Translations under genes and position numbers: made by a program
Assembly: GCA_001179505.1 (NCBI GenBank)
Contig: CDMY01000908.1
Span: 124,001-188,000, forward strand
Source of the DNA: Vitrella brassicaformis CCMP3155
Lineage: Eukaryota > Protista > Chromerida
Length of the DNA stretch: 64,000 nucleotides
Direction: 5' to 3'
Notes under the pieces: generated by a model
Database searches by the model: none
The model's input: the letters and a program-made list of their open reading frames with translations, nothing else
Told to the model about the DNA's origin: nothing
Shown: in pieces, positions 9,729-55,153 of the stretch
Position numbering within the stretch: position 1 is the stretch's first letter
Layout of the letters: each line of letters begins with the position of its first letter

Positions 9729-10157
9729 GGCTTGTTGACCGCAGTTTCACAACACACGGTCAGATATCACAGAGCACGTAGCGCTTGCCACGATGCATCT
9801 TTTGTTTTCAGCTTCACGAGACGCGCAGTCAACCAGACGTCTCGTACCTNNNNNNNNNNNNNNNNNNNNNNNNNNNNNNNNNNNNNNNNNNNNNNNNNNN
9901 NNNNNNNNNNNNNNNNNNNNNNNNNNNNNNNNNNNNNNNNNNNNNNNNNNNNNNNNNNNNNNNNNNNNNNNNNNNNNNNNNNNNNNNNNNNNNNNNNNNN
10001 NNNNNNNNNNNNNNNNNNNNNNNNNNNNNNNNNNNNNNNNNNNNNNNNNNNNNNNNNNNNNNNNNNNNNNNNNNNNNNNNNNNNNNNNNNNNNNNNNNNN
10101 NNNNNNNNNNNNNNNNNNNNNNNNNNNNNNNNNNNNNNNNNNNNNNNNNGGGGACGC

Positions 10158-11470
10158 TCACGGGAGGTCGGCGGAGAAGTCGAGCTCGGTCTCCGACTCG
10201 ATGGCCGCTTGTGATGTGTGTCGGCAGGTGCAGCTGCAGCTTGAGAAGGCTGCTGTGATCCGAGTCATAACAATGGCGAACAGGGTGCTGCAAAACAAAG
10301 GCGAGGCAGCGAATTGAGACAGATTGTCTGTCATGTCTCGTGCCCCATCCACCCACCTCTTGCCGTTGTTGTCTCGCTTCGGAGAAGCCTTCGAGGTAAT
10401 GTTGCATGAGATAATAGTTGAGTCGCCGCCGCCCACCCGAGGCGCAACGGACACACCAGCGGCCGGCTGGCCAACGGCATCCGGCGGCTCGTCATACAGC
10501 GGCGGTGCGCCGCCACGAAACAGGTGTGCCACCAGTCCCTGAGGAACGCTTCTTGTGTCGCCCCCCTGCGACAGATGTAGTCGAAATGGTGGTTCTCGTG
10601 GTTCAGTAGGATCATCGTAGAGTGCTCGTCGAAAGCCTCCGACTGACAATCAAACACCTCGTGGCCCAGCCGATAGTCGCCCGGGCGATAGAAGTATGTT
10701 GCCAGGCGCCGATTAGTCCGGTCGAAGGTAATGACGACACAGCTCAACCCCAACGCATAGAGAGACGCCGCGACCACTCCCTCGTTTGGCCATGTCGGCC
10801 GCCTCCACCCACGCTGAATGAGCCACTCCTCTGCCACCATCATTCGAAGATCTGCCAGCGCGTTTGGGAACAACTGGCTGAAAGGGACCAGCTGGTTTCC
10901 CTGCCACCATCGTGCCGTCGCGAAGCGTCGCTCAAGGACACGCAGTATGACACGCTTCAACTCCAGTGGACTCGGAGAGATAAGCCCACCACTCTGCTCC
11001 CTAAGACGCTCGGCGAGGCAATGGAAGAAGCAGTGGTGGTCAGCGGGCTGCTCAATGACAGTCAGTGGCACGCGAAGACAGCTCAGCACTTGCTTCAGTC
11101 TCGTCAAGTCGCCCGAGAAATGCATTCTGTCAGACTCGGCTCATGAAGGACGGCGGCTAGGTGCCATCTCTCAAGCTCCTGACCTCCCACTCCAGCACCA
11201 GTGTCAATGTCAGTGTCCCCACGCCGCATGTGTCCTCGAGGCTTGTCCTCCCTGTCTCCTCCGGTGTGGCTTCCTCCCGCCATCGCGATGAAATACTCTT
11301 TGACATATTTCTCAGGGCTCATAGAGGCCAACTCCTCTCGGAGGCACTGGTCAAGGAATGCCCGTTCCTCGGCCGGCAGCCCCTGAAAGAACTCAGGCAG
11401 AGGGCGCACGCTGGCCGAGCTGCTCGAGGTCATGTTGTTGTTGGCCTTCTCGGGCAGGTTGACGGTGCTG
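10158..11470 (-). pseudogene. OTU-domain copy 2, diverged, with 1-nt frameshifts on both sides of an intact OTU core
   Basis: EQPADHHCFFHCL...WLIQRGWRRPTWPNEGVVAASLYALGLSCVVI...NHHFDY. Single-base deletions versus copy 1 near 11125 (tgcattctg vs tgcattcctg) and near 10528 (gtgtgccacc vs atgtgcccacc). The 5' exon differs from copy 1. Confidence 0.6.
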
Positions 11471-11590
11471 TGCTGGGCGCAAGGAGACGCCAGCGTGTCG
11501 GCTTTGTCAGCCGGGGGCGGCTTGTCGTGGGTAACCGTCTTTTCGGGCTGATGGGAACCTGATCCAGTCAGCACAGAGACATTGACGATA

Positions 11591-11821
11591 TGAGGCATAA
11601 TCATGGGTGGAGGTTGAGGGTTGTGTTCACTAGCTCACCGGCATCCTTGGCGACAGCCGTGGCATTGCAGTGACCGGTGCGGCGGAGGATGCGGAGCGGA
11701 CGGATCCCCCCGCGAGACTCAGTGCCGGCTGGCCGCACTGCCAGACGCTTCTTCAGGGAGAGCATCGCGCGGCTGGGGCTATGGCGATGTCGAGACGGCT
11801 TCAACGACCAGGGTGTGCAAG
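11591..11821. repeat. 231-bp duplicate of 14980-15210, both gap-adjacent
   Basis: tgaggcataatcatgggtgg...gggtgtgcaag identical at offset 3389. Confidence 0.9.
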
Positions 11822-12121
11822 NNNNNNNNNNNNNNNNNNNNNNNNNNNNNNNNNNNNNNNNNNNNNNNNNNNNNNNNNNNNNNNNNNNNNNNNNNNNNNN
11901 NNNNNNNNNNNNNNNNNNNNNNNNNNNNNNNNNNNNNNNNNNNNNNNNNNNNNNNNNNNNNNNNNNNNNNNNNNNNNNNNNNNNNNNNNNNNNNNNNNNN
12001 NNNNNNNNNNNNNNNNNNNNNNNNNNNNNNNNNNNNNNNNNNNNNNNNNNNNNNNNNNNNNNNNNNNNNNNNNNNNNNNNNNNNNNNNNNNNNNNNNNNN
12101 NNNNNNNNNNNNNNNNNNNNN

Positions 12122-12835
12122 CCAGCGCGTTTGGGAACAGCCGGCTGAAAGGAATCAGCTGGTCTCCCTGCCACCATCGTGCCGTCGCGCAGTATGATAC
12201 GCTTCAGCTCCAGTGGACTGGGAGAGATAAGCCCACCACTCTGCTCCCTGAGACGCTCGGCGAGGCAATGGAAGAAGCAGTGGTTGTCCCCCGGCTGCTG
12301 GATGACCGTGAGCGGCACGCGAAGACAGCTCAGCACTTGCCTCAGTCTCATCAAGTCGCCCGAGAACTGCATTCCTGTCAGACTCGGCTCATGAAGGACA
12401 GCGGTGAGGTGTCTTCTCTCCAGGTCAAGATCAGCGCGAAGTCTCGGCTTGCGCAGCTGGAACTTTGGCGGCGCTCCTGTGGACTTGATATGGCGAGGGT
12501 TGCCGCGCAGCTGAGCTTGTTCCGCTGCTTGCGAATATTGCGCGACAACCTCACAAACATGACGTCCTGCAGCAGCTTGTTCGGCACCGAACGCAACGAC
12601 TCCCGACTGACCGCACCTAGACAGACAATCCAAGCAGCGCAACGCTGATGATGTGTGTTCCTTCTCCCTGTGTCTCCCTGTCTCTGCTGTGCCCACATGC
12701 CCCTTGTCTTTCACGGCTTGTTGACCGCAGTTTCACAACACACGGTCAGATATCACAGAGCACGTAGCGCTTGCCACGATGCATCTTTTGTTTTCAGCTT
12801 CACGAGACGCGCAGTCAACCAGACGTCTCGTACCT
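12122..12835. repeat. Apparently exact 714-bp duplicate of 9136-9849 (5' part of OTU copy 1), directly after a gap
   Basis: Identical by eye at a constant offset of 2986, including the 20-nt deletion. Both copies abut gaps. Confidence 0.9.
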
Positions 12836-13859
12836 TCTTAGTTTTTGTCTTCGAACGGCTTTCAAAGAAGGGGCACGCGTCGCAACCTTCTCTCCTCCTC
12901 TCCTTCCCGTCCCTTACGCTTACGTGCAGGTCGGTAGTACAGGCCTCGTGTACCTTCCCATGCCACATCTGAAACACATCAGAACCACACACCTGAGCAA
13001 CGCGTCTCACCCTTCCCCGCCTATCAGCTCACCACGGTCGCAGCAAAACCCCTTCGGCTCCCCGCGCGTACACTTCAACAAACGGCACCCACCTGCTCAC
13101 ACACGAGCATGCACGCAGCCACACATCCATTCTTGCCATTCCTCCCGCCACTCACCGCATTGAATGACAGGCGAAGCAACCAACACCAAGAACAGCAAAG
13201 CGATTGCACGCGGGGGGCCACCTGGTTCTGCCAATTTGGAGTGTCTCATGTTCTTCGTCGTCATACGAAAGGAGAAAAAGGAAGAAAGCTCAAGAGCATG
13301 ACCCAAGGAGCAGCGGTTTCGGCAAGCTTTCTGCGTTTCGTGTCGTGCGACCCGAACGCATAGGTGCTCCTTCTTCTCTCCTCCACCGCCGCGAGAACGC
13401 AATACTTACATATTTCCGTGGAGCTCCTCTGGCTGCATCTTCCTATACACATTTCCCCCACTGGAACGCGAGGTTTTTCCTTTTGCGGAGATCGACCTCT
13501 CACAGCATTTGTTAAAGGGGGGGAACCCTACACCCTGCAGGGCGAGCTCAGAAATGCCCGTGATTCTTCTTGGGAGATCAGTGACAGAGGAGCGCAGGCG
13601 ACCTCAGTCCGCCACGGGCGTCCCCCAGTTTCCGTCTTATCGTGATTTGTGAGTCCAGGGCGGCAGATCTGCTTTAGTCTGTGTGAGGTGAGGGCCCGTC
13701 CAAAGAGGACAGGACACGAGAAGGTACGCGGGCAGGCGGAAAAGAGCAAGGGCGTCGTTGGTGGAGGAAGGGCCCTCATTTCTCATTGTGTGTGTGTCAC
13801 TGTCAGGTCGTCAAGACGTAGTAGGACTATCTCTCTGTGTGCACCACCGAGCCCCACCC

Positions 13860-14679
13860 ATGGCCGCACGACAACCAGCAGCTGAGCAGCAGCAGCAGGA
13901 CGCCGCGGAGCCCCCGATGGACGTCGACGCCGTGCAGGAACTCCAGAGCGGCGATGAGCCTGACGGTCAGCACCGAACGCCGCAGCACTTGATTTGTGTC
14001 GATGTGTGTGCCCGTGGTTGATTGTGTTCAGGTGGAGACAATGAGGAGGGCGGTGGGATGGCCGATGGGAGCGAATCGGTGAGGCATTCATTCGCGGACA
14101 CCCCGTCCGTCCATGTGACGCTCGTCACCTGGCTGTTCTCCCGTTGCCTCTGTGTCGCTGTGTCAGGGCGGTGGTATGCAGGACGACAGTGACGACGGAG
14201 GGATGCTGGACGAAGAGGACGACCAAGACGACGACAACGGGGACAGTAAGTGGGAAGACGACAGTGACTCACACAGCGACGGTCATGACGATGGCTATGA
14301 GGACGATGGTACGCCAGACAGACAGACACATGAGAGGGAGGGGGCGAGGTGCGGGCCCATACATGCATTCGTTCTCGGTGTGCGTCGTCTGATGGCTGTG
14401 TGTGTCCCACCAGGTCACTCGGTGGTGCCAGTCACCTCAGTCGACGTACCAGACGGCTTCTTGGGAGCCGATGAGCTGGAAGCTCGATTCCCTTACGGCA
14501 CCAGCGACGTTACCAAGTCGCTGGCAGTGGGCGTCCTCGGCCGCACCATCCCCAGCCCACAGCACGTGACCGACCTCATCCAACAGGGAGCCAACCCCAA
14601 TATCAAGCCTCAGCTGAGGAAGAAGGGCAGCAAGGTTGATGGGTTCGGCTACTCGCTGCTTACTCTTGCTGTCCACGAC
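13860..14679 (+). CDS. Lineage-specific ankyrin-like family protein, 3'-truncated by a gap
   Basis: MAARQPAAEQQQQDAAEPPMDVD..., acidic exons, then PSPQHVTDLIQQGANPNIKPQLR...YSLLTLAVHD (ankyrin-like LI.QGA.PN and SLL.LA motifs). Canonical splice sites. Confidence 0.6.
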
Positions 14680-16033: not shown

Positions 16034-16541
16034 CTCTACCACAACACACGACAAACATTGGTAGGTGTGGTTCGTGGGGGATGGCCTTTTGTCGTTGTGT
16101 GAGGCTGTGTGCATGATTCATTCAGGTCATCGGTTTGAGTCCTCTGGTAGCACGGTAGCATTGGCGGACGGGCATCGACACACGCACACGCACACACAAA
16201 TGGAGAGATGTAGATAGATGTAGAAAAGGAGGCCATGTGCGTCATGCAGTCTGTCTAAGATAGTCTTGCCTCGAGGGTCTTGTCTTGTGCAGATACACAC
16301 ATCCATACATCCGTCCATCGACCTGTCTATGCCGTGTGCCGTGCTATGCGTGTGTGAGATGCGAGTGTGCCTGCCCACATGTGACCTATCTACACGCGTG
16401 TATTCAGAGACTGTCGGTCCATCATGGAATAAGGGTCTCAGCGCCATTGCGTGTCTTCAAACTTGTGAGCATCCTCAAGAGGACACACACACGCACACAC
16501 ACACACACACGCACACACACGCACACGCACACGCGCACAGA

Positions 16542-19500
16542 ATCTGATGGACGTCTCACACACCATCTGTCTATCTGCTGAATATGCGGACAGACCACAT
16601 CGCACGAATGACGCGGACACAACGAACACAGAGGGCCGAGAACAGAGAGGCCTCACAGCTGGAGAAAAGCAATACGCACCCATACAGCCATCAGAGACCC
16701 CTCAATCAGTCTGACCTCACACTCACACCACGGTGAGCACCTCCATTTCATTGGCCATGAAGTACTCATTGCACCCAAACACAGCATTGTCATCCCAATT
16801 CCTCACCCCCACATAGCCCTCAGGCACCCCGGTGATGACCTGACGGCAGCTGCGCATATCAACATCCCGTGGCTGGAGCCATGGCTGGAGTTTGGCTTTG
16901 CGTTGGGCGATCACCCAACTGCCACCCTCACTGCCCAACTCTAGACACGGGATGAAACCCAGACTGATCCACAGCATCGGCCCATTCACTGACCCCTCCC
17001 GCCCGGCCACACACACAAACCCTTTCCCCCCCTCTATCTTGGTGGGCTTGTCGAAATGGCCGGCCAGTGAGAAATGCCACACATCACACTCGTATTTGGT
17101 CTTGCCTCTTGGGTCGTCGGGCACCCGGATTCCGGTACTGATGAAGGTGCCGAAGGCGTACTTGTCCTCGCGGATAACGAACACCAGGCCTCTCGCATGG
17201 CCCACACACCGCAGCAAATCGCCATACGACGGCCCGTCACGTGATGCGCTGAATGAAGAAGAACGCACACGCACACACGCACGCAGACACACACAGATAG
17301 GCACACGGAGTCAAACGATGGACGATGCCAATGACAAGAGCAGCGTACCTGTAGATGAGCTTCAGTCTGCCCGCAGTTGTCGGTCCGAGAAACCGATAGA
17401 GTGCCGCCGACTGGAGCGCATCAAAATTTGCACCCTCGATCACCTGCAATCAAAAATCAGAAGGCAGGATGATCAACACATCTATACTCTCTCTCGCTGA
17501 CGTGTGTGTGACCTTGAGTGAGAGCAGTGACCGGCCGCTGAGACGAATCACCTCCACTTCATCGGCCATGAAGAACTCACTGCCCCCAAACACAGCCCAG
17601 CCATACTCATTCCTCACCCCAACATAGCCATCAGGCACATGACTGCGGGGGATGCGATGACAGCAGCTGCGCATATTACCACTTCTGACGCCAAAATACA
17701 GTTCGTCGATCTCCAGCTTCGCCCCACCCACTGTCCCCTCCGGCCCGGCCACATGCACACCCCTGCCTCCCCCCATCCTGGTCGGTGTCTCGAAGTGGCC
17801 GGCCAGAGAGAATCTCCACACATCACACATGTAGGCGCTGCTGAAGCTTCTTGGGTCGTCTGGCAGCTGGATGCCGGCACTCGTATAGACGCCAAAAACG
17901 TACTTGTCCTTGCGGATGAGGAACACCAGGCCCTTCGTGTTGCCCACACAGCGCAGCAAATCGCCGTACCCTGCGCCGTCACGCGAAGCCCTAAGAACAT
18001 CAGAGACAGCGGAGAAAGACACATGATTGGTTGCAGTGTCTGTGATGTGGTTTGTGCGTCGCACCTGTACAGCAGAGTGAATTTACATTCGTCCCACATG
18101 CCGGGCGCCAAGGTGGAGTGGAGGGACGCACACTCAGTCGAACTCAGACCGCTGCCAACGACCACCTGCATACACAAAGGGGGAGGTGAGGGCAATTGTG
18201 ACGCTGCAATCACCCCATGGGCATTCTCACCTGGGGGTCGGGCGATTGATTGTCCTCGTCTGTCGTGCTGCGACTTGAGAGGGATGTGAAGATACCGAGG
18301 ATGTATGATGCCACGAGCGATAACCAAGACCTTCGCCTGGGCTCTGTCGTCCTGCGAGTCGAGAGGGCCGTGATGTCTTCCACCGCACCGTCAGACGCAC
18401 TGACGATGCCATCATCATCCTGATAAAGCACAACGGAGATTTACAAGAAGCGAGTCGCCGCCTTGTTGTCTGCGTCAGTCTCACCTCTGGTATGTCACTC
18501 AGTCGATCGTCGGCAGTAACAGTGACTGCCGACTTGACTGACGAACGAGACCACACCTGCACACACAAAATCACAATGCCTCCCCCCCTGTGTGGGTGTC
18601 CATTTCTCGGCGCCTCAGTGACCACAGACGGCAGCCCCTGTCGGTGGCTGCGTGTGTCGCTCCTGTGGATCTTGTTTGGCGGCCTCTCGTTGGTCAGGCG
18701 ACTCTCTGACGGAACAATCTGCATGGCAACGCAGATAGCCAGAACAGATTGTCACACACAGAGATGGATGACCGGTCTTGGTTTGCGTACGCTCATGGTA
18801 TTTGGCCCCGAGTGCTGTGATCGCTGGTCGAGCGGCCGATTGCCGGCAGCAGGATCGTCGTCTGGTGGACAGGTGGTGGTCTGCAGCTCACACGGCAGAC
18901 ACACAAAGGCCTCACTTTCCGCCGTAGTGTCAGTACGGCGAGTGTATTACCTGTCGGCTGAGGTCGATGGTCGATCCGATGAGCTGATGTGCCACTCGAA
19001 TGTCATCACCAGCCCGGATGTCTAGATATGAGCTGATGTGCCCCGACAGAGTGAGAGGCCGGGCTGGGGGATGCGGGTGGGGCGGATGTATTGGGGAAGC
19101 CGACACCGACGCCTCTTCTCGGGCCTGAAACGAAAACAGATGGAGGGCGTCGTGAGTGTTTGTTTTGTCTCTCTTGGCTTGCTCACACTCATGGTATTTC
19201 GCCTCGAGTACTGCGATTGCCGGTGCAGCGGTCGATGAGCGTCAGCCCTCGGCCGCTGATGACTCACCCTATCGTTAGGACGACGGCCGATGAATCCATC
19301 CGCCATTCGCACCGCAGCCGCCTCGTCAACCACTTGGCCCTGCAAGACATCACAGGAGAAACATACGTGAACGAACAAGGGATTCACATCAAATAAGGGA
19401 TACCAGGCGGTCGTTTGGTTGCATTGTCGTCGGCCGATAGGCGCCACCAGGAAATGCCCTCTCAAGCCCGCCACACTCGTTTTTGGTACTGTCATGGCAG

Positions 19501-20520
19501 CTGCCTCGCTCTCTACCACGGTCGCCCTGCAGTTCAAAGATAAACCAGTACTCAGAGAGAAGAAAAAATCCATTCACGTAGCTGCGCTCTGCGTACCTTT
19601 CTACTGCTGTCTGCTGGGTGTTCTACGGCAGTAGCAGCGAAGGTTTGTGCTGGCACCGATTGCTCTCCTCCAAGGCTCTGACACGACACAGCATGGGGCG
19701 CCTTGGTTCTGTGAGCGCTGTCTTTTTTGCGTCTTACGCGGATGTCATCTGATGCTACAACCCCGGGCAAACAGCGGGGCCGATTGGGAGGAGGACGGGA
19801 GGGGTCAAGTAGCCAGAAATCCTGAAGACCAACACACCGTGAACATACGCAACATTACACTCTTTGTCTGTTCCACCTGTGGGCATCGGTTCTTGAATGC
19901 GGCAATCCAGGTATCGCTGGCCGAAAAACCACGGACGCCCACTCGATTGGCGATCTCCGTTGACTTACTCTTGATGGCAGTGTGAAGAATAATCCTCGGC
20001 TGCGGATAGCCTGTAATCCATTGCTGCAGCTCCGTCTCAAGCTGCTGCGTAGCCAGAGGTGACGGTGGAGCGGGCTGAGAAGACAGGTCCGGTGTCGCCG
20101 ACTGGTAAGAGAGGGGAATGGGTAGGGGATGGGGGTACGGTGGATGCATCGGGGGGGCGGGTCGCCCGGCGGCTGCAGCAGCAGAGATGTGCAGCTCCGG
20201 CTGGTGGATAAGTGGAAGGGGAAGGGGATAGGGATAAAGTTGGTGGATCGGGGGATGAGAAGACGCCGCCGCCGCAGCCGACACAGATTGCCCTCCTTCC
20301 CGGCTCTGCAACGGCACAAAAGATGTGGTTAGAACATAAGATGAAGAGTGTGACGTGTCGATTGCTTGTCACGTGATTAGTCAGCTGCAACGCGGCTTGA
20401 GTGCCATCCGATGTGTCGTATCCGGGCAAAGCGTGGATCCCTTCTTGCGGGAAGGCGTCGAAGTGTTGGTCGCGCGTCATGCCGTCAGTGTCAATCGGGG
20501 GAGGTGAGAGGGTAGTTACG

Positions 20521-49816: not shown

Positions 49817-51317
49817 CTATCCGCCCGCTGCGGTCTTCCTGACAATGATGAGATGGCAGTACTGCTGCCGCAGACCTGACGCACCAACACCCGCCCCGTC
49901 CACACTCCCACCTCCCTGCTTTAGAGTGTCGGCAGCCGGTGGTGGTGGTGGTGGTGACGGCTCAGCCGTCGCACAGCCATCTGATGGCATCGGTGGCGGA
50001 CCGACACTGCAACCATCATCTCTGCGCCGGCTGTTGTCATCTGCAGACGTGGTCGAGAGGCCGCCTGGTGCTGTGGGCTGCTGTTGCTCTTCTTGTTGTC
50101 TTCGGAGGGCCGGGCGGATGCCTGATGGACAGATCGACAGATCGGAAGACAGACATACGGGAATGACCATGGATGGACGGATGGATGGTTTCTTGGCCCA
50201 GCCCAGCAGCACCATACGTGCAAATAAGCGTCTCAGCAGCTTCCGACGCATCGCTGTCCGATACTCCTGCACAGACAGACCAAGAGCATACCATAGATGC
50301 ATTCATCACGTCACGTCACGTGTGCCGTCTGTCCGTCTGTCTGTTTAGAACAATTAATGCATGCGCTGCGCTCGTCTCACTCTCACCTCACCTCGCCAGC
50401 CTCCTTAAGGATATGTCCATTCTCCGGCAGGAAGGCTTCCCTCAGCGGCCTGGGGTGCACCTTGGACCTGAGGATGTTGATGAACTCGGCCATATCGTTG
50501 AGCTCCACCTCACACGCGTACACCAACTCCCACTGATGAGAGGGAAAGTGCGCCTGCCGGCGGGGCCAGCCGCTGTGGGATATCAGGTAGAACAGACCGC
50601 CGCACCTGCATGCCGCACATGAGACGAGATAGAGGGGTTCGTACGCGTCTGTCTGTTGGTTTGCATATATCTGAGTGGTCAGCTCAGCTGGTCTCACCGG
50701 AGCACACGGCTGATCTCAGCGACCATCAGGGCGGTGGATGGTGTGCTGGCAAACTCACTCCTATTCCCATCGCCACACGAGAGAGCATCAAACGTGCCTG
50801 AACACACAACACACACACACACACACACACATATAAAGTACCATGTGGATGGAATGGCAGCACTTTTGTTGCCTCATGCACTCTCTCTGCGGACTCTCAC
50901 CTTTATCGATGGCGATGTCGAACACACCATTCCTCAGTGCCATGTGTGTGGCGTCCATGGTCACCCAGGCCATGCCGTGCGCATCTTTCTGCTTCATCAA
51001 GCGGATGACGCTGGGCGATATGTCGACGTTGGTCACATTTCTGTAGCCATCGGCCGCCATCTCACTGGATAGCTGCGAATTGCCGCACCCCACCTGTGCC
51101 GGAGAGAGGCATTTTAGGGCGGTGCATGAGTTGCGAAGCCTCCTTTGTGCTTATCTGTTCTTACCATAAGGATGCCTGCATTTTTGTCTGGCGAGTGCCT
51201 GTGGAAGTGCTCTTTCAGCTCTCGATAGGCGCAATACCAATCAAAGGCCTCGCCGCCGCTCTGAGATCCGAATCGGTCCTCCCAGAATGATGCATCTGCA
51301 TAATGCCGCACGCTCAT
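49817..51317 (-). CDS. Class I SAM-dependent methyltransferase, EEF1AKMT4/METTL13-N-like
   Basis: HYADASFWEDRF...EAFDWY, ILM|VGCGNSQLSSEMAADGYRNVTNVDISPSVI, TMDATHM...FDIAIDK|GTFDAL, EISRVL|RCGGLFYLIS, C-terminal QYCHLIIVRK. Confidence 0.88.
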
Positions 51318-51523
51318 GCACTCCGATCACCCTCTCTGCTGCAGATCTGCGCGTTGGCGGAACGGAACCCATGCAAACGCCTTTTTGCCTTCCAAATTTT
51401 TCCACCTCGCGCAGCTTTTCACGAAGCACCCTAACCTCCTTTCTTCTGCGAGCTCAAGCTCGCAAGCCAGTGGCGCCTTGCGTCTCGCTTTTCCACGCTA
51501 TATTCCCACCTTATCTGAGCGAG

Positions 51524-54256
51524 ATGTGCAAGCAGTTGAGCCCCCGGGCCATGGCGCCCACTGTGCAGGCGCCCAGCGCATCCAAGGGCTCCCAGAACAG
51601 CACAGCAGCGACGCCCAAGCGTGGAGTGAGCAAACTCTTTTGGCCGCTCTCAAGCACTGGGATGATGGTGCTTGGGATAGCCTTGCTGCCGGTAGTGCCT
51701 GTTGTGGCGTTCGGGGTGATCTATCTCATCGCATTCCCTGCCATCATGTTTTCGTTCGATGGTCAGCCAGCTGAGAATCAGCGCACAACGCACAGCACAC
51801 ACATGCATTGTCGTGTGCGGCATGGTGGTCTTGTCTTTCTCAGTGGGGACGCGCAACAACGTGTTGACGCGCTTCGTGATGCGTGTCAAGACGCTCCTTA
51901 TGGTTGGCTGGATTGCGTCGACATTTCCCATCATCGCGCCCTGTGTGGTGGCGTACACGCTCGTCAAGGGAGGGTCGCTGGGTTCCTTCACCGGGCCCAT
52001 CACTGAGGCGCTGTGGATGTGGGCGTTCGGCACACAGAGAAAGCGCAAGCACAAGAGGCTGGCCCTGCTCACCGGTGGGTGGGCGGGCGGTGGGCGGACA
52101 GCCACATGCGTGTAAGCAATCGTGTGTGTCACGTGTGTGTGGGTGCAGGTGGCAAGATGACCAAGACGTTGCAGGTAGCACGGTGTCTGCATCGGCAGGG
52201 CTGCGATGTCATCGTCATCGCTAACCACAACTACTGGGCGGTCAGTCAGCCACATAAGACTCGGACAGACGGACGGACGAGCGGACTCTTTGGCGTGCGC
52301 TGATCGATGTGGTGCAGGCGGCGATTCAGTTCAGTGGGTGTGTGTACGGCTATTACACCACACCGATGGCCGAGACGGATCCTCACGGTATGGACTGCCA
52401 CGGACGGATGGATGGGTAAATGCACTCACTCGTGTCACTTGTGACCTGAACCCACATATCCAGGTTATGTGGACAAGATCATCTCCATCATTGTCCAGGA
52501 GAAGGTGACTTCGCGCGCCGGGACGAGCGTGTTGCACCGATTCATCCTCATCCTTGTCTGTGTGCCGTGCAGGTCGATCTGTACATCCCTGTGAGTGACG
52601 TCAAGACCAGTGTGGAGGACTCGATGGTCCGCGACAGACTGCCCCCATTCTGCCGACCCTGGTGCTTCGACCCGCCACTCACGCGCAAGCTTGACGACAA
52701 AGTCCAGGTGCACAGACACACATGAACGTTCTTGTGTCTTGAGATGCGGATATGTGCGTGTTGTGTGGTGTGCTTGTGCTGTGTGTGTTGGTGTACTGTA
52801 TGTCAGTTTACGGATTTGTGTGACGAGATGGGACTGCAGGTGCCGGTGGCCTATCGCATCACGTCCAGGAGCCAGCTGCACGAACTCAACAAAATGGACC
52901 TCAAGGTACACACGCGCGCACCGAAACACCTCACACATGGACGGATGGATGGATGGATGGTCTTTGGCTGATTCATGGGTCTGTTCGTGCAGGACGACCG
53001 ATATGTACTCAAGCACGTCGAGTGAGTCTCACAGACACATGACACAACACAACACCAGTGCGCCGATGCACACACGCATCTGTCTGTCTGCTGTCTGGTG
53101 CAGGTACGACCCCATGCGCAGATACGACATGTTCACCCTCCCATGCACACCTCAAGAGTAAGCAGACACCTCGCCACGACAACCACACACACACACACAC
53201 ACACATATGCACACACACACATGGATGGATGTAACGCATGCAGGCTGGACAACTATCTGGACACTCGTGACATCCACCCGTCCCCGAGCGACCCCTGGCA
53301 GGCACAGCAGTGGATCACCGGCACCGAGTACTGCACATGGTCCGTCATACAGGCCGGCAAGGTTCTCCTCCACACCTGCCACCTCTCATCGCCCGCACAA
53401 CTCAACTACAAGTACGACGACGTCCCGGAGATCCTCGACTGGACAGAGAAATTCGCCGCGGCCCTCAACACGGCCGGTGGGTATGCATGTAGCCAGCCAT
53501 CCACCCATCCATCTGCTCTCCTCTTGTTTGTCAACAGGTCAGTTTTCCCTGGACGTGATAGTGCGTGAGAGCGACGGGGAGTGCTTCGTGATAGAGTGCA
53601 ACCCCCGGACGCACTCGGCGTGCGTCGCATTCCACGACCAGGCCGCTGCCGTCGGCGAGGTTTTTCTGCACGGTACGCTTGTTTGTGGGTGTGTAAGTTA
53701 CTGCGTCTGATGTGTGAATGCAATGCCTCCATGTCATGTGTGTGCGTATGGGTGCGGTGCATCGATCAGGCGCGTCTCACTGGACGAAGCCGGAGAACCA
53801 GGCCAAGCTGCCCATGCTGCCCAACAAAGACCACACGCACGTCTACTGGGTACATCAATCACACCAACCGCCCTTACACCCACACACGCAGATCAGATCC
53901 CCACTTACTTCGGCCGATGTATTGCATCGGTGTGTGCAGTTGTACCAGGAGGTCATGAAGCTGTGGAAGGTGCGGTCGTTCCAGCAGCTCGCCGACCGGG
54001 TGGCCTTCCTCTCCTCTGGCCGCGACGCCTGGTTCGAGGTGTCTGACCCGCTGCCATTCCTCGCCATCCTCTACTGGCAGATGCCATGGCGGCTGCTGCA
54101 GGTACGCACCCATGTGTGTGTATGTCAACAGGGGTGGGCACAGGTGTTGTGTGTTGTGGGATGTGTGTGTGGCTGTAGGGTCCGTTGCTGACGGGCAACA
54201 GCTGGAGCAAGCTGGAGTGGTGCATCGGCAAAGTGGTTGAGGTCGGCGGCGACTGA
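51524..54256 (+). CDS. mysC: MysC-type ATP-grasp ligase (mycosporine-glycine synthetase) with an extra hydrophobic N-terminus
   Basis: LLT|GGKMTKTLQVARCLHRQG...NYW...RFS; DLYIPVS; LDDKVQ|F; YVLKHVE|YDPMRRYD...LPC; PWQAQQWITGTEYCT; GQFSLD; IECNPRTHSA; DPLPFL...WQMP; terminal IGKVVEVGGD*. Colinear with cyanobacterial MysC (GGKMTKALQLAR...IGKLVELGGD). Start is 51524 or 51551. Confidence 0.9.
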
Positions 54257-55153
54257 TCGCGTGTGTTCGAACTGGAGTCAGTGAGGGCGTGAGGGAGTGC
54301 GGGAGAGATGGGTTGTGGTCGGTCCGTGAAGGGTTTTCCTCCCGAGTGACAGCACAGCACAGCATGTGTTGTGTGGATGAGTGTCGTGTATCACCCCACG
54401 CATGCATTGATTGCGTTCATGTGGATGGATGCAAATGTGCGTGTCTTGATGCTCGTGTGTGATGGATGCATAGATGGATGGATGGATGGATGGCTAGCTC
54501 CCGAAGGGACATGCGCCACGCACCCCCTGCATCATGGCCGTATACACGTGGAAAGGGAGTAGCCGAAAACAGACAAACGTGAGTCTGTCTCCTACTCTGT
54601 CTGTCTGGTGCCGCATGGATGGATGCCCCCCCCTCTCTCTCTCTCTCTGTGTGTGTGTGTGCCTGTCCCTACCTGTGTCCTTGTCTGTCTGTCTGTCTGT
54701 CTGCCTGCCTTTCTCCTCCATTTCTGAGTGAGTCTCTGTCTGTCGATAGCAAACATGGATCCATCCATGGATGACGGCTCACTATCTATTTGTGTGCTGA
54801 CGCGTGTCGATACGCATTGCATGCAACACGACAGGACAGACAGCCCAGCTCTCTTCTTATAGTGAGAAGAGGCACACACATACATACATACACTCTCCTC
54901 AGCGAGCAGCCAAGCCACCTCGCGCAGTTTTTCGCCATCCCTGTCTGCCTGTCCGTCTGTCTGTGGGTATGTGTGTGCGACGTGTCTGGAGGCGGGCCGT
55001 CACTTTTGTCCTTTTGTCGTGCGTTTGCTGCGTGGGCACGTTTGTCATGCATGAAAGAGAGGGCTCCAGTGTGCAGCCAGCCGGCACCCGTGAGTGTGGT
55101 GTGCGGGGGGATACCTGGGGCTTCGCGTACGTCTGTCTTTCTCCGCATGGGAC

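What the first reader, a model, noticed from the sequence alone, without database searches (positions are those of the whole stretch)
51524..54256. Intron-rich MysC: mycosporine-like amino acid (UV sunscreen) biosynthesis in a probable chromerid
Seen: full-length colinearity with cyanobacterial MysC from GGKMTK to IGKVVEVGGD, split by about a dozen spliceosomal introns, so it is a long-resident nuclear gene and not contamination. It has an additional hydrophobic N-terminal helix (MMVLGIALLPVVPVVAFGVIYLIAFPAIMFSF) ahead of the usual one. Established: MysC ligates glycine to 4-deoxygadusol, which is made by MysA and MysB. Neither mysA, mysB nor mysD/E is in this window. Inference: the organism makes mycosporine-glycine or a variant using a dispersed pathway and a membrane-anchored ligase.
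Basis: partly seen in the sequence, partly recalled or inferred. Interest (0 to 1): 0.7.

Follow-up and report, generated by a model that had tools for sequence, protein, structure and literature searches.

The report
Spliced MysC-type sunscreen ligase gene, Vitrella
The alga Vitrella brassicaformis carries one expressed, 14-exon nuclear gene for a membrane-anchored relative of MysC, the enzyme that adds an amino acid to the core of mycosporine-type UV sunscreens; likely partner genes lie on other contigs, so this is a new member of a known pathway.

Summary
Window 51524-54256 (+) is a complete coding sequence of 14 exons and 13 GT-AG introns (61-99 nt). Fully spliced contigs from four public runs (three studies) match it. 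Its translation equals a public 558-aa protein of Vitrella brassicaformis CCMP3155, annotated only as "ATP-grasp domain-containing".

The protein aligns end to end (residues 146-558, 38% identity, E 4e-95) with Ava_3856, the biochemically characterised MysC. Its nearest bacterial relatives sit in mysA-mysB-mysC clusters. In trees it falls inside the MysC-like clade whose members carry an N-terminal membrane helix (support 100/99). Within that clade it groups, with moderate support, with a eukaryote-only subclade. One member of that subclade is an Amoebophrya MysD-MysC fusion that lies beside a cyclase-methyltransferase fusion gene.

It is the only such gene in the 72.7-Mb genome, and it has one hydrophobic segment more than its relatives.

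Candidate partner genes are dispersed. Contig C273 holds tandem sugar-phosphate cyclases plus a MysB-like methyltransferase; the cyclases carry a mixed EEVS/DDGS active-site fingerprint and are not a canonical MysA. Contig C646 holds a MysE-like single-module NRPS. No MysD was found.

Verdict: a new member of a known kind. The substrate (4-deoxygadusol or gadusol) and the product are not shown. The scan had noted this same stretch before (s1-248750).

The parts
51469..54400 (+). Transcribed region as far as it was laid. Spliced contigs begin at 51469-51486 and run past 54400; by record length the 3' UTR reaches about 54658.
   Evidence: table 8 (records of 2126-2131 nt)
51524..51761 (+). Exon 1: start codon, a 41-residue hydrophilic Ser/Ala/Pro/Lys-rich N-terminus, and the lineage-specific extra hydrophobic segment
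51647..51761 (+). Extra hydrophobic segment, residues about 42-79 (continues to about 82 in exon 2). It has no counterpart in bacterial MysC.
   Evidence: helices 44-54 and 57-75 in the model, at low pLDDT
51844..52074 (+). Exon 2: the family's usual N-terminal membrane helix, a roughly 17-residue insertion and a basic stretch ahead of GGKMTK
51891..51965 (+). Conserved MysC-type N-terminal hydrophobic helix (residues 96-120)
52149..52240 (+). Exon 3. It begins with the GGKMTK motif (residues 157-162, 52149-52165), which is the start of the ATP-grasp core.
52318..52387 (+). Exon 4
52464..52504 (+). Exon 5
52573..52707 (+). Exon 6 (holds the invariant DDK, K267)
52807..52905 (+). Exon 7
52993..53021 (+). 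Exon 8 (holds the invariant K309)
53104..53157 (+). Exon 9. The intron that follows it (53158-53243) holds a (CA)19 repeat and was not listed as a joint, but it fits the contig arithmetic.
53244..53476 (+). Exon 10, the largest and most informative ATP-grasp exon
53538..53672 (+). Exon 11, with the invariant ECNPR motif (residues 427-431, 53594-53608), the metal/ATP site typical of ATP-grasp enzymes
53770..53849 (+). Exon 12
53940..54101 (+). Exon 13 (invariant DPLPF)
54179..54256 (+). Exon 14, ending in IGKVVEVGGD and the TGA stop

Best explanation
This is the single nuclear gene of Vitrella brassicaformis for a MysC-type ATP-grasp ligase.

Shown: the gene is intact, spliced at 13 introns and present in transcript assemblies. 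The protein has an ATP-grasp fold and keeps every residue that is invariant across 18 MysC-like proteins. It aligns end to end with the characterised MysC.

Inferred: like MysC, it uses ATP to phosphorylate the enol oxygen of a cyclohexenone core and lets the amino group of an amino acid, most likely glycine, displace the phosphate. The core would be 4-deoxygadusol, or possibly gadusol. The product would be mycosporine-glycine or a close variant. The core would come from the cyclase-cyclase-methyltransferase locus on contig C273. A MysE-like NRPS on contig C646 could add a second amino acid. Two N-terminal hydrophobic segments probably tether the enzyme to a membrane with the catalytic domain on one face. 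The compartment is unknown.
For: Gene model and expression.

Family. NCBIfam PRK06849 scores 285 bits, E 8e-85. That model scores the characterised MysC highest, at 585 bits. Identity to Ava_3856 is 38% over 414 residues. The AlphaFold model has pLDDT 81.5 and matches PurK, PylC and L-amino-acid ligase ATP-grasp folds at E about 1e-13. All 26 invariant columns of the 18-sequence alignment are kept.

Context of relatives. The top hits lie in mysA-mysB-mysC(-mysD/E) clusters. Of the 80 best cyanobacterial genome loci, 73 have mysB and 68 have mysA upstream.

Tree. The MysC-like clade is supported at 100/99 against the helix-less PRK06849 proteins. Vitrella groups with a eukaryote-only subclade at 87/92.

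Links of that subclade to the pathway. Members are fused to MysD-like domains. In Amoebophrya the MysD-MysC fusion lies 2.4 kb from a cyclase-Methyltransf_3 fusion gene.

Own genome. This is the only MysC-like gene. A cyclase plus MysB-like methyltransferase lies on C273. A MysE-colinear A-T-TE gene lies on C646; its A-domain exon best matches the mys-cluster NRPS in one of two cyanobacterial genomes and is a close second in the other.
Against: There is no biochemical or metabolite evidence.

The protein is on a long branch (1.65 changes per site). It scores below the curated PRK06849 cut-off (285 against 406 bits), as do all eukaryote-clade members (199-322 bits).

It departs from family consensus at several well-conserved positions, for example CTWS for CTHS and SLDVI for SFDFI.

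The cyclases are not canonical DDGS. They score 147 bits against ValA and 104 bits against Ava_3858, and their fingerprint is Leu/Asp/Thr. Whether 4-deoxygadusol is made is therefore open.

Another methyltransferase, on C364, matches MysB at least as well as the C273 one does.

The genes are not clustered, so the association is only co-occurrence in one genome.
Confidence: 0.72

Rival explanations
1. It is a MysC-like ligase with a shifted specificity. It would act on gadusol (made by an EEVS-type cyclase plus MT-Ox) or attach an amino acid other than glycine. The result would be a gadusol-core or otherwise non-canonical mycosporine, as was proposed for a green-algal EEVS/MT-Ox/ATP-grasp/OMT neighbourhood.
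For: The cyclases are closer to EEVS and carry Leu and Asp at the two validated fingerprint positions (residues from PMC10666671). The green-algal mosaic pathway hypothesis is in PMC7826186. Cyanobacterial MysC2/MysC3 paralogues use ornithine or lysine. An earlier scan note reports an expressed MT-Ox gene in this genome (s1-239436; not tested here). The protein is divergent and on a long branch.
Against: The third fingerprint residue is the DDGS-type Thr. The cyclase is joined to a MysB-type (Methyltransf_3) methyltransferase as in mysA-mysB. The fingerprint alone does not predict the product. Nothing in the ligase sequence can yet be read as a specificity determinant, because no MysC structure is solved.
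Confidence: 0.2
2. It is an ATP-grasp ligase of the PRK06849 superfamily that works outside mycosporine metabolism. Its likeness to MysC would reflect common descent only.
For: It scores below the curated family cut-off. It is not clustered with any pathway gene. Most members of the eukaryote subclade are unnamed transcripts. One relative, P0241, has no cyclase or Methyltransf_3 gene within the 10 kb shown upstream.
Against: It lies inside the helix-bearing MysC-like clade at 100/99 support. It shares the N-terminal helix, the GGKMTK motif and the C-terminal GGD with MysC. Subclade members are fused to MysD-like domains, and one is clustered with a cyclase-methyltransferase fusion. The genome also holds cyclase-methyltransferase and MysE-like genes.
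Confidence: 0.07
3. It is bacterial contamination of the assembly, or a dead pseudogene.
For: The closest named relatives are cyanobacterial.
Against: It has thirteen spliceosomal GT-AG introns. Fully spliced transcripts occur in four runs from three studies. The 558-codon frame is intact. The best bacterial identity is only 35-41%.
Confidence: 0.01

Closest known systems
MysC (Ava_3856) of Trichormus/Anabaena variabilis ATCC 29413, the ATP-grasp ligase that makes mycosporine-glycine from 4-deoxygadusol and glycine (Balskus and Walsh 2010, as reviewed in PMC10666671)
   Same: End-to-end alignment of the catalytic domain at 38% identity. Both have an N-terminal hydrophobic helix followed by GGKMTK, the ECNPR motif and a C-terminal IGK(L/V)VE.GGD. 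Both match the same NCBIfam model.
   Different: The Vitrella gene is eukaryotic, has 13 introns and is not clustered with pathway genes. The protein has about 90 extra N-terminal residues with a second hydrophobic segment and a roughly 17-residue insertion before GGKMTK. It scores 285 bits against the model where Ava_3856 scores 585, and it lies in a separate eukaryote subclade.
Eukaryote-only MysC-like subclade: Amoebophrya sp. A120 MysD-MysC fusion (P0068), Fibrocapsa japonica (P0032/P0215), Symsagittifera (P0053/P0218), and Tara/MMETSP transcripts
   Same: They group together in trees (87/92). They share motifs such as PWQ.Q(Q/R)(W/F) and LP C.P..L..YL and have similar sub-threshold PRK06849 scores.
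   Different: Vitrella is a lone long branch with no relative above about 41% identity. It is not fused to a MysD-like domain. Its partner cyclase is EEVS-like, whereas the Amoebophrya cyclase is the Moorena/Crocosphaera MysA type.
ATP-grasp gene of the green-algal 'mosaic' sunscreen neighbourhood (EEVS + MT-Ox + ATP-grasp + OMT; PMC7826186)
   Same: A MysC-related ATP-grasp occurs together with an EEVS-like cyclase in a eukaryotic alga, and a gadusol-core product has been proposed.
   Different: The green-algal genes are neighbours, whereas the Vitrella genes are dispersed. I did not compare the sequences directly, because none was available by reference.
Helix-less PRK06849 ATP-grasp proteins of about 380 aa (e.g. 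P0031, P0046), function unknown
   Same: Same NCBIfam model and the same fold.
   Different: They lack the N-terminal hydrophobic helix and the GGKMTK motif, and they form the outgroup clade (100/99).

Membership tests
MysC (mycosporine-glycine synthase, ATP-grasp) | ATP-grasp fold with intact nucleotide and metal-binding residues | tested here: met
   The model has pLDDT 81.5 and matches PurK, PylC and L-amino-acid ligases at E about 1e-13. K162, K267, K309, E358, E427, N429 and R431 are invariant and present.
MysC (mycosporine-glycine synthase, ATP-grasp) | Full-length significant similarity to a biochemically characterised MysC | tested here: met
   38% identity over 414 residues to Ava_3856 (P0279), E 4e-95, reaching both C-termini.
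MysC (mycosporine-glycine synthase, ATP-grasp) | Placement in the MysC clade, apart from other PRK06849 ATP-grasps | tested here: met
   The clade of helix-bearing MysC-like proteins is supported at 100/99 against the outgroup, and Vitrella lies inside it. Within it, Vitrella lies in a eukaryote subclade (87/92) and not among the characterised bacterial enzymes, so strict orthology of function is not shown.
MysC (mycosporine-glycine synthase, ATP-grasp) | N-terminal hydrophobic helix before GGKMTK, and a C-terminal GGD | tested here: met
   Vitrella has the helix (residues 96-120) plus one extra segment (42-82).
MysC (mycosporine-glycine synthase, ATP-grasp) | Score above the curated cut-off of NCBIfam NF005315 (PRK06849, 406 bits) | tested here: not met
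   285 bits. Cyanobacterial MysC proteins score 546-585 bits and all eukaryote-clade members tested score 199-322. The model is built for bacteria, so this shows divergence and does not exclude membership.
MysC (mycosporine-glycine synthase, ATP-grasp) | Co-occurrence with enzymes that make 4-deoxygadusol (MysA/DDGS and MysB) | tested here: inconclusive
   A cyclase plus MysB-like Methyltransf_3 locus lies on C273. The cyclase is closer to EEVS and has a Leu/Asp/Thr fingerprint. The only other DHQS-like gene is the AROM domain on C297.
MysC (mycosporine-glycine synthase, ATP-grasp) | ATP-dependent condensation of glycine with 4-deoxygadusol | not testable with these tools
   This needs an enzyme assay or heterologous co-expression.
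DDGS / MysA (asked of the C273 cyclases, as pathway partner) | Glu254, Ala268 and Thr347 (Ava_3858 numbering) in place of the EEVS residues Leu267, Asp281 and His360 | tested here: not met
   Vitrella has MLEEL...RCVDFGH, which gives Leu and Asp (EEVS type), and ...MQKTQAG, which gives Thr (DDGS type). This comes from alignments to 4P53 and 5TPR; the residue list is from PMC10666671. The Leu position was read by hand across an exon junction that I inferred.

The most novel reading that the evidence does not exclude
Vitrella runs a dispersed, hybrid sunscreen pathway. A double cyclase with an EEVS/DDGS-intermediate active site is fused to a MysB-type methyltransferase, and an MT-Ox may take part. 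These would feed a doubly membrane-anchored MysC-type ligase and a 40-exon MysE-type NRPS. The product would be a mycosporine with a non-canonical (for example gadusol-type) core, made at a membrane of the complex plastid or the ER. If so, the whole cyanobacterial-type mysABCE logic was inherited or acquired and then remodelled in the closest photosynthetic relatives of apicomplexan parasites.
Probability: 0.25. Interest if true: 0.6.

Novelty: new member of a known kind. Interest (0 to 1): 0.4.

Why it matters
Chromerids are the photosynthetic sisters of apicomplexan parasites and live on sunlit coral reefs. In the paper library I could search, nothing links Vitrella or Chromera to mycosporine or gadusol genes. 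This gene gives a function to a protein that is publicly annotated only as "ATP-grasp domain-containing".

Together with the cyclase-methyltransferase and MysE-like genes, it makes a concrete prediction: Vitrella makes mycosporine-glycine or shinorine-type compounds. That can be checked with a UV-HPLC run.

It also adds a data point on how eukaryotes carry this pathway: dispersed and intron-rich here, but clustered and fused in Amoebophrya. It also raises the question of why MysC-type enzymes keep a membrane helix.

Tried and rejected
Pfam on single exons gave nothing useful.

A PDB sequence search with the whole protein found no relative; no MysC structure is solved.

MysD. The family search PF07478 gave one weak hit on C840, which is a biotin-carboxylase (pyruvate-carboxylase-type) exon. 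Crocosphaera MysD as query found nothing. MysD was therefore not found with these queries.

NRPS. PF00668 (Condensation) found nothing. That was a false negative for the pathway question. After an earlier scan note pointed to a MysE-like gene, Moorena MysE as query found colinear A-T-TE exons on C646.

MT-Ox. My guess that its oxidoreductase half is GFO_IDH_MocA gave six hits, none on C273 or C908. This does not test MT-Ox, and I had no reference sequence for it.

Naming the eukaryote subclade. Most members are unnamed metatranscriptome sequences. I could therefore not place named dinoflagellate, red-algal or cnidarian MysC proteins in the tree.

Papers. Osborn et al. 2017 (PMC5400686) is not held. 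The search 'MysC' + 'transmembrane' returned only unrelated papers.

The 57-aa cyclase exon alone matched nothing in the PDB, so the Leu267-equivalent position was read by hand against the ValA and DDGS sequences printed.

Joined step left out. I built and searched no spliced protein of my own. For the finding's gene I used the public protein P0001, which equals the exon translations. The C273 and C646 genes were searched exon by exon only, so their full models and the cyclase-methyltransferase fusion are not verified here.

Full report
**What is in the sequence**

Window 51524-54256 on the + strand is a complete protein-coding gene. Three-frame translation and inspection of splice sites give 14 exons:
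- 51524-51761
- 51844-52074
- 52149-52240
- 52318-52387
- 52464-52504
- 52573-52707
- 52807-52905
- 52993-53021
- 53104-53157
- 53244-53476
- 53538-53672
- 53770-53849
- 53940-54101
- 54179-54256

The 13 introns are 61-99 nt long, and all are GT-AG. The coding length is 1677 nt, that is 558 codons plus TGA.

**Expression and splicing**

Four of them held about half of the sampled words, which is the exonic share of the stretch. I laid those four runs (X9-X12, three studies) on 51400-54400.

- Contigs of 2126-2131 nt skip 12 of the 13 introns at exactly the predicted GT..AG borders and show no differing letters.
- The remaining intron (53158-53243) holds a (CA)19 repeat that the tool skipped. 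The contig arithmetic fits exons 8 and 9: 85 record letters lie between the pieces, which equals 2 + 29 + 54.
- The contigs start at 51469-51486, so the ATG at 51524 is the first in the transcript.

These are assembled contigs. They show the spliced form exists but say nothing of its level.

**Identity of the protein and the organism**

A search of 1.84 billion representative proteins with exon 10 alone returned a 558-aa protein at 100% identity, P0001. Its sequence equals my exon-by-exon translation. Public sources name it "unnamed protein product [Vitrella brassicaformis CCMP3155]" and "ATP-grasp domain-containing protein". I used P0001 as the reference for all whole-protein work and built no spliced protein of my own.

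**Family**

- Exon by exon, six exons hit NCBIfam NF005315 (PRK06849) colinearly.
- The whole protein scores 285 bits, E 8e-85, over model positions 3-362 of 389.
- That model scores the characterised MysC of Trichormus variabilis ATCC 29413 (Ava_3856, P0279) at 585 bits and cyanobacterial cluster-encoded MysC at 546-551 bits. Helix-less proteins of about 380 aa score 408-433, and eukaryotic relatives score 199-322. Vitrella is thus below the curated cut-off of 406 bits, like every eukaryotic relative tested.
- BLASTP against Ava_3856 gives 38% identity over 414 residues (146-558 against 59-458), E 4e-95, ending at the shared C-terminal GGD.
- In an 18-sequence alignment Vitrella keeps all 26 invariant columns, including K162 of GGKMTK, K267, K309, E358 and E427-C-N-P-R431. 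It departs at several merely well-conserved positions.
- An AlphaFold model built on that alignment (pLDDT 81.5) matches ATP-grasp structures such as PurK, PylC, biotin carboxylase and L-amino-acid ligases at E about 1e-13.
- No MysC structure exists in the PDB copy.

**Are the relatives really MysC?**

The two best named hits lie in canonical clusters:
- Moorena: DHQS-like, Methyltransf_3, ATP-grasp, then a C-A-T-TE NRPS.

The 80 best loci in 185,579 species genomes are all cyanobacterial (35-41% identity). Of these, 73 carry a MysB-like gene and 68 a MysA-like gene just upstream.

**Phylogeny**

A 72-row quick tree and a 46-row careful tree (LG+C20+F+G4, ultrafast bootstrap/SH-aLRT) agree.

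- All proteins with an N-terminal hydrophobic helix form one clade (100/99), separate from the helix-less PRK06849 proteins.
- Inside that clade the backbone is unresolved.
- Vitrella groups with a eukaryote-only set at 87/92. That set holds Fibrocapsa japonica, Symsagittifera, Amoebophrya and many marine metatranscriptome sequences (sources).
- Vitrella's own branch is long (1.65), and no relative exceeds about 41% identity.

It is therefore inside the MysC-like clade but not nested among the characterised bacterial enzymes. The bootstrap had not fully converged, and named dinoflagellate, red-algal and cnidarian sequences are missing, so I make no claim on origin.

**What ties the eukaryote subclade to the pathway**

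- P0068 (Amoebophrya sp. [quoted passage not shown]
- P0070 (an MMETSP transcript, 926 aa) has the two domains in the reverse order. It sits on a separate long branch of the MysC-like clade, not within the subclade.
- In the Amoebophrya genome, the fusion gene is followed 2.4 kb downstream on the same strand by an 868-aa gene with DHQ_synthase, DHQS_C and Methyltransf_3 domains. Its cyclase part is 43% identical to Moorena MysA.

Two fused genes there cover all four steps of the pathway.

**The rest of the pathway in Vitrella**

Ligase. PRK06849 and Ava_3856 as queries each find only this gene.

Cyclases. DHQS-like matches occur at two places.
- C297 has VDSSVGGKT and NFGHSVGHA motifs next to an EPSP-synthase-like exon. 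It is the AROM shikimate enzyme.
- C273:122-128 kb holds tandem cyclase copies 1740 bp apart, interrupted by an assembly gap. Exons matching MysB follow on the same strand.
- The central cyclase exon finds the mys-cluster cyclase as best hit in four of five cyanobacterial genomes.
- Against solved structures, however, it is closer to the EEVS ValA (4P53, 147 bits) than to the DDGS Ava_3858 (5TPR, 104 bits). The C-terminal exon behaves the same way: 73 against 63 bits for one cut of the exon, 69 against 59 for another. Moorena MysA shows the reverse, 312 bits for 5TPR against 214 for 4P53.
- A review gives three active-site positions that separate the two enzymes: EEVS has Leu267, Asp281 and His360, and DDGS has Glu254, Ala268 and Thr347. 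The first two are validated by mutagenesis (PMC10666671).
- Aligned to both structures, Vitrella reads Leu, Asp and Thr. The Leu position was read by hand across an inferred exon junction.
- The genome therefore lacks a canonical MysA. Its cyclases have a mixed fingerprint that leans towards EEVS.

Methyltransferase. A second Methyltransf_3 gene, on C364, matches MysB at least as well overall as the C273 one does.

MysD. It was not found.

MysE.
- My Condensation-domain search was negative.
- With Moorena MysE as query, I found colinear exon matches covering residues 475-1342 (A-T-TE) at C646:148-153.5 kb.
- Its A-domain exon is 73% identical to the mys-cluster NRPS of a Nostocales genome, the best of 39 NRPS matches there. 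In Chlorogloeopsis it is a close second.
- That exon spans the specificity region, so part of the likeness may only reflect a shared serine substrate.

MT-Ox. An expressed MT-Ox gene is reported by another note (s1-239436). I could not test it.

**The N-terminus**

- Kyte-Doolittle scans show one hydrophobic segment 15-35 residues before GGKMTK in every MysC-like protein examined, bacterial or eukaryotic. The outgroup has none.
- Vitrella has two segments, at residues 42-82 and 96-120. The second aligns with the family's helix. The first lies in a lineage-specific extension of about 90 residues.
- A further insertion of about 17 residues (about 126-141) is modelled as a helix.
- Residues 1-41 are hydrophilic (rich in Ser, Ala, Pro and Lys). 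There is thus no signal-peptide-like core at the extreme N-terminus, and the compartment cannot be read from the sequence.
- One other eukaryotic relative, P0241, also has two hydrophobic segments.

**How it most likely works**

Shown: an intact, spliced, transcribed gene; an ATP-grasp fold; a conserved catalytic set; membership of the MysC-like clade; and co-occurrence in one genome with cyclase-methyltransferase and MysE-like genes.

Established for MysC (PMC10666671): ATP phosphorylates the C3 enol oxygen of 4-deoxygadusol, and glycine displaces the phosphate to give mycosporine-glycine.

Inferred here: the Vitrella enzyme does the same on 4-deoxygadusol or a close analogue, while tethered to a membrane. 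A MysE-like enzyme may then add serine. Because the cyclases lean towards EEVS and an MT-Ox may exist, a gadusol-type core is a live alternative. Such a core was proposed for a green-algal EEVS/MT-Ox/ATP-grasp/OMT neighbourhood (PMC7826186).

**Novelty**

Mycosporine genes are known in cyanobacteria, actinobacteria, dinoflagellates, cnidarians, red algae and green algae (PMC6001144, PMC4426668, PMC7826186). In the held library no paper links Vitrella or Chromera to mycosporine or gadusol genes; the co-mentions are incidental.

This is therefore a new member of a known kind, with three particular features: an extra membrane segment, a dispersed and intron-rich gene set, and a non-canonical partner cyclase. 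The scan had already noted this same stretch from an overlapping window (s1-248750).

Noticed in passing
L110 (Amoebophrya sp. A120, CAJINV010000001.1:11935810-11959807), genes at 10001-13998 and 16417-19532: In this parasitic syndinian, a MysD-MysC fusion gene (1176 aa) lies 2.4 kb upstream of a DHQS-like/Methyltransf_3 fusion gene (868 aa). Two fused neighbouring genes thus cover all four mycosporine steps. The only held paper that mentions both Amoebophrya and mycosporine is a dinoflagellate genomics review, which I did not read.
   Followed up: partly
G000:C273:122000-128700 (L011 1700-8200): Tandem EEVS-like cyclase copies lie 1740 bp apart, with nearly identical 5' halves and diverged 3' halves. 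An assembly gap of Ns interrupts them, and a MysB-like methyltransferase follows on the same strand. Fusion into one protein looks possible but was not verified here. Earlier scan notes (s1-215895, s1-215951) report it as expressed and fused.
   Followed up: partly
G000:C646:148000-153600 (L114 3100-8600): A many-exon NRPS-like gene is colinear with the A-T-TE part of cyanobacterial MysE. A second thioesterase-like match lies at C646:61224-61391 (-).
   Followed up: partly
G000:C364:71600-72250 (L012), minus strand: A Methyltransf_3 gene matches cyanobacterial MysB (41-48% identity over about 200 residues) at least as well as the C273 methyltransferase does. It is unclear which of the two is the MysB equivalent.
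   Followed up: no
window 50788-51317, minus strand: A divergently oriented gene with a class I SAM-methyltransferase domain (Methyltransf_11/25). Its first coding exon ends about 150 bp from the 5' end of the MysC-like transcript, so the two may share a bidirectional promoter.
   Followed up: partly
window 52937-52960, 53184-53221, 54461-54497, 54682-54707: Short (GGAT)n, (CA)n and (TGTC)n microsatellites recur in the introns and the 3' UTR of the gene. The read-laying tool skipped two of them.
   Followed up: no
P0027 (492 aa, from a 7-kb metagenome contig): A Methyltransf_3 (MysB-like) domain is fused in front of a MysC-like domain. The protein sits in the cyanobacterial part of the tree, so it is another natural fusion of adjacent pathway steps.
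   Followed up: no
L022-L101 (80 cyanobacterial mys loci): The cyclase upstream of mysB comes in two types. About half of the loci are 70-100% identical to Moorena/Crocosphaera MysA, and the rest only 34-46%; the latter include the Nostoc linckia NIES-25 locus (L100).
   Followed up: no
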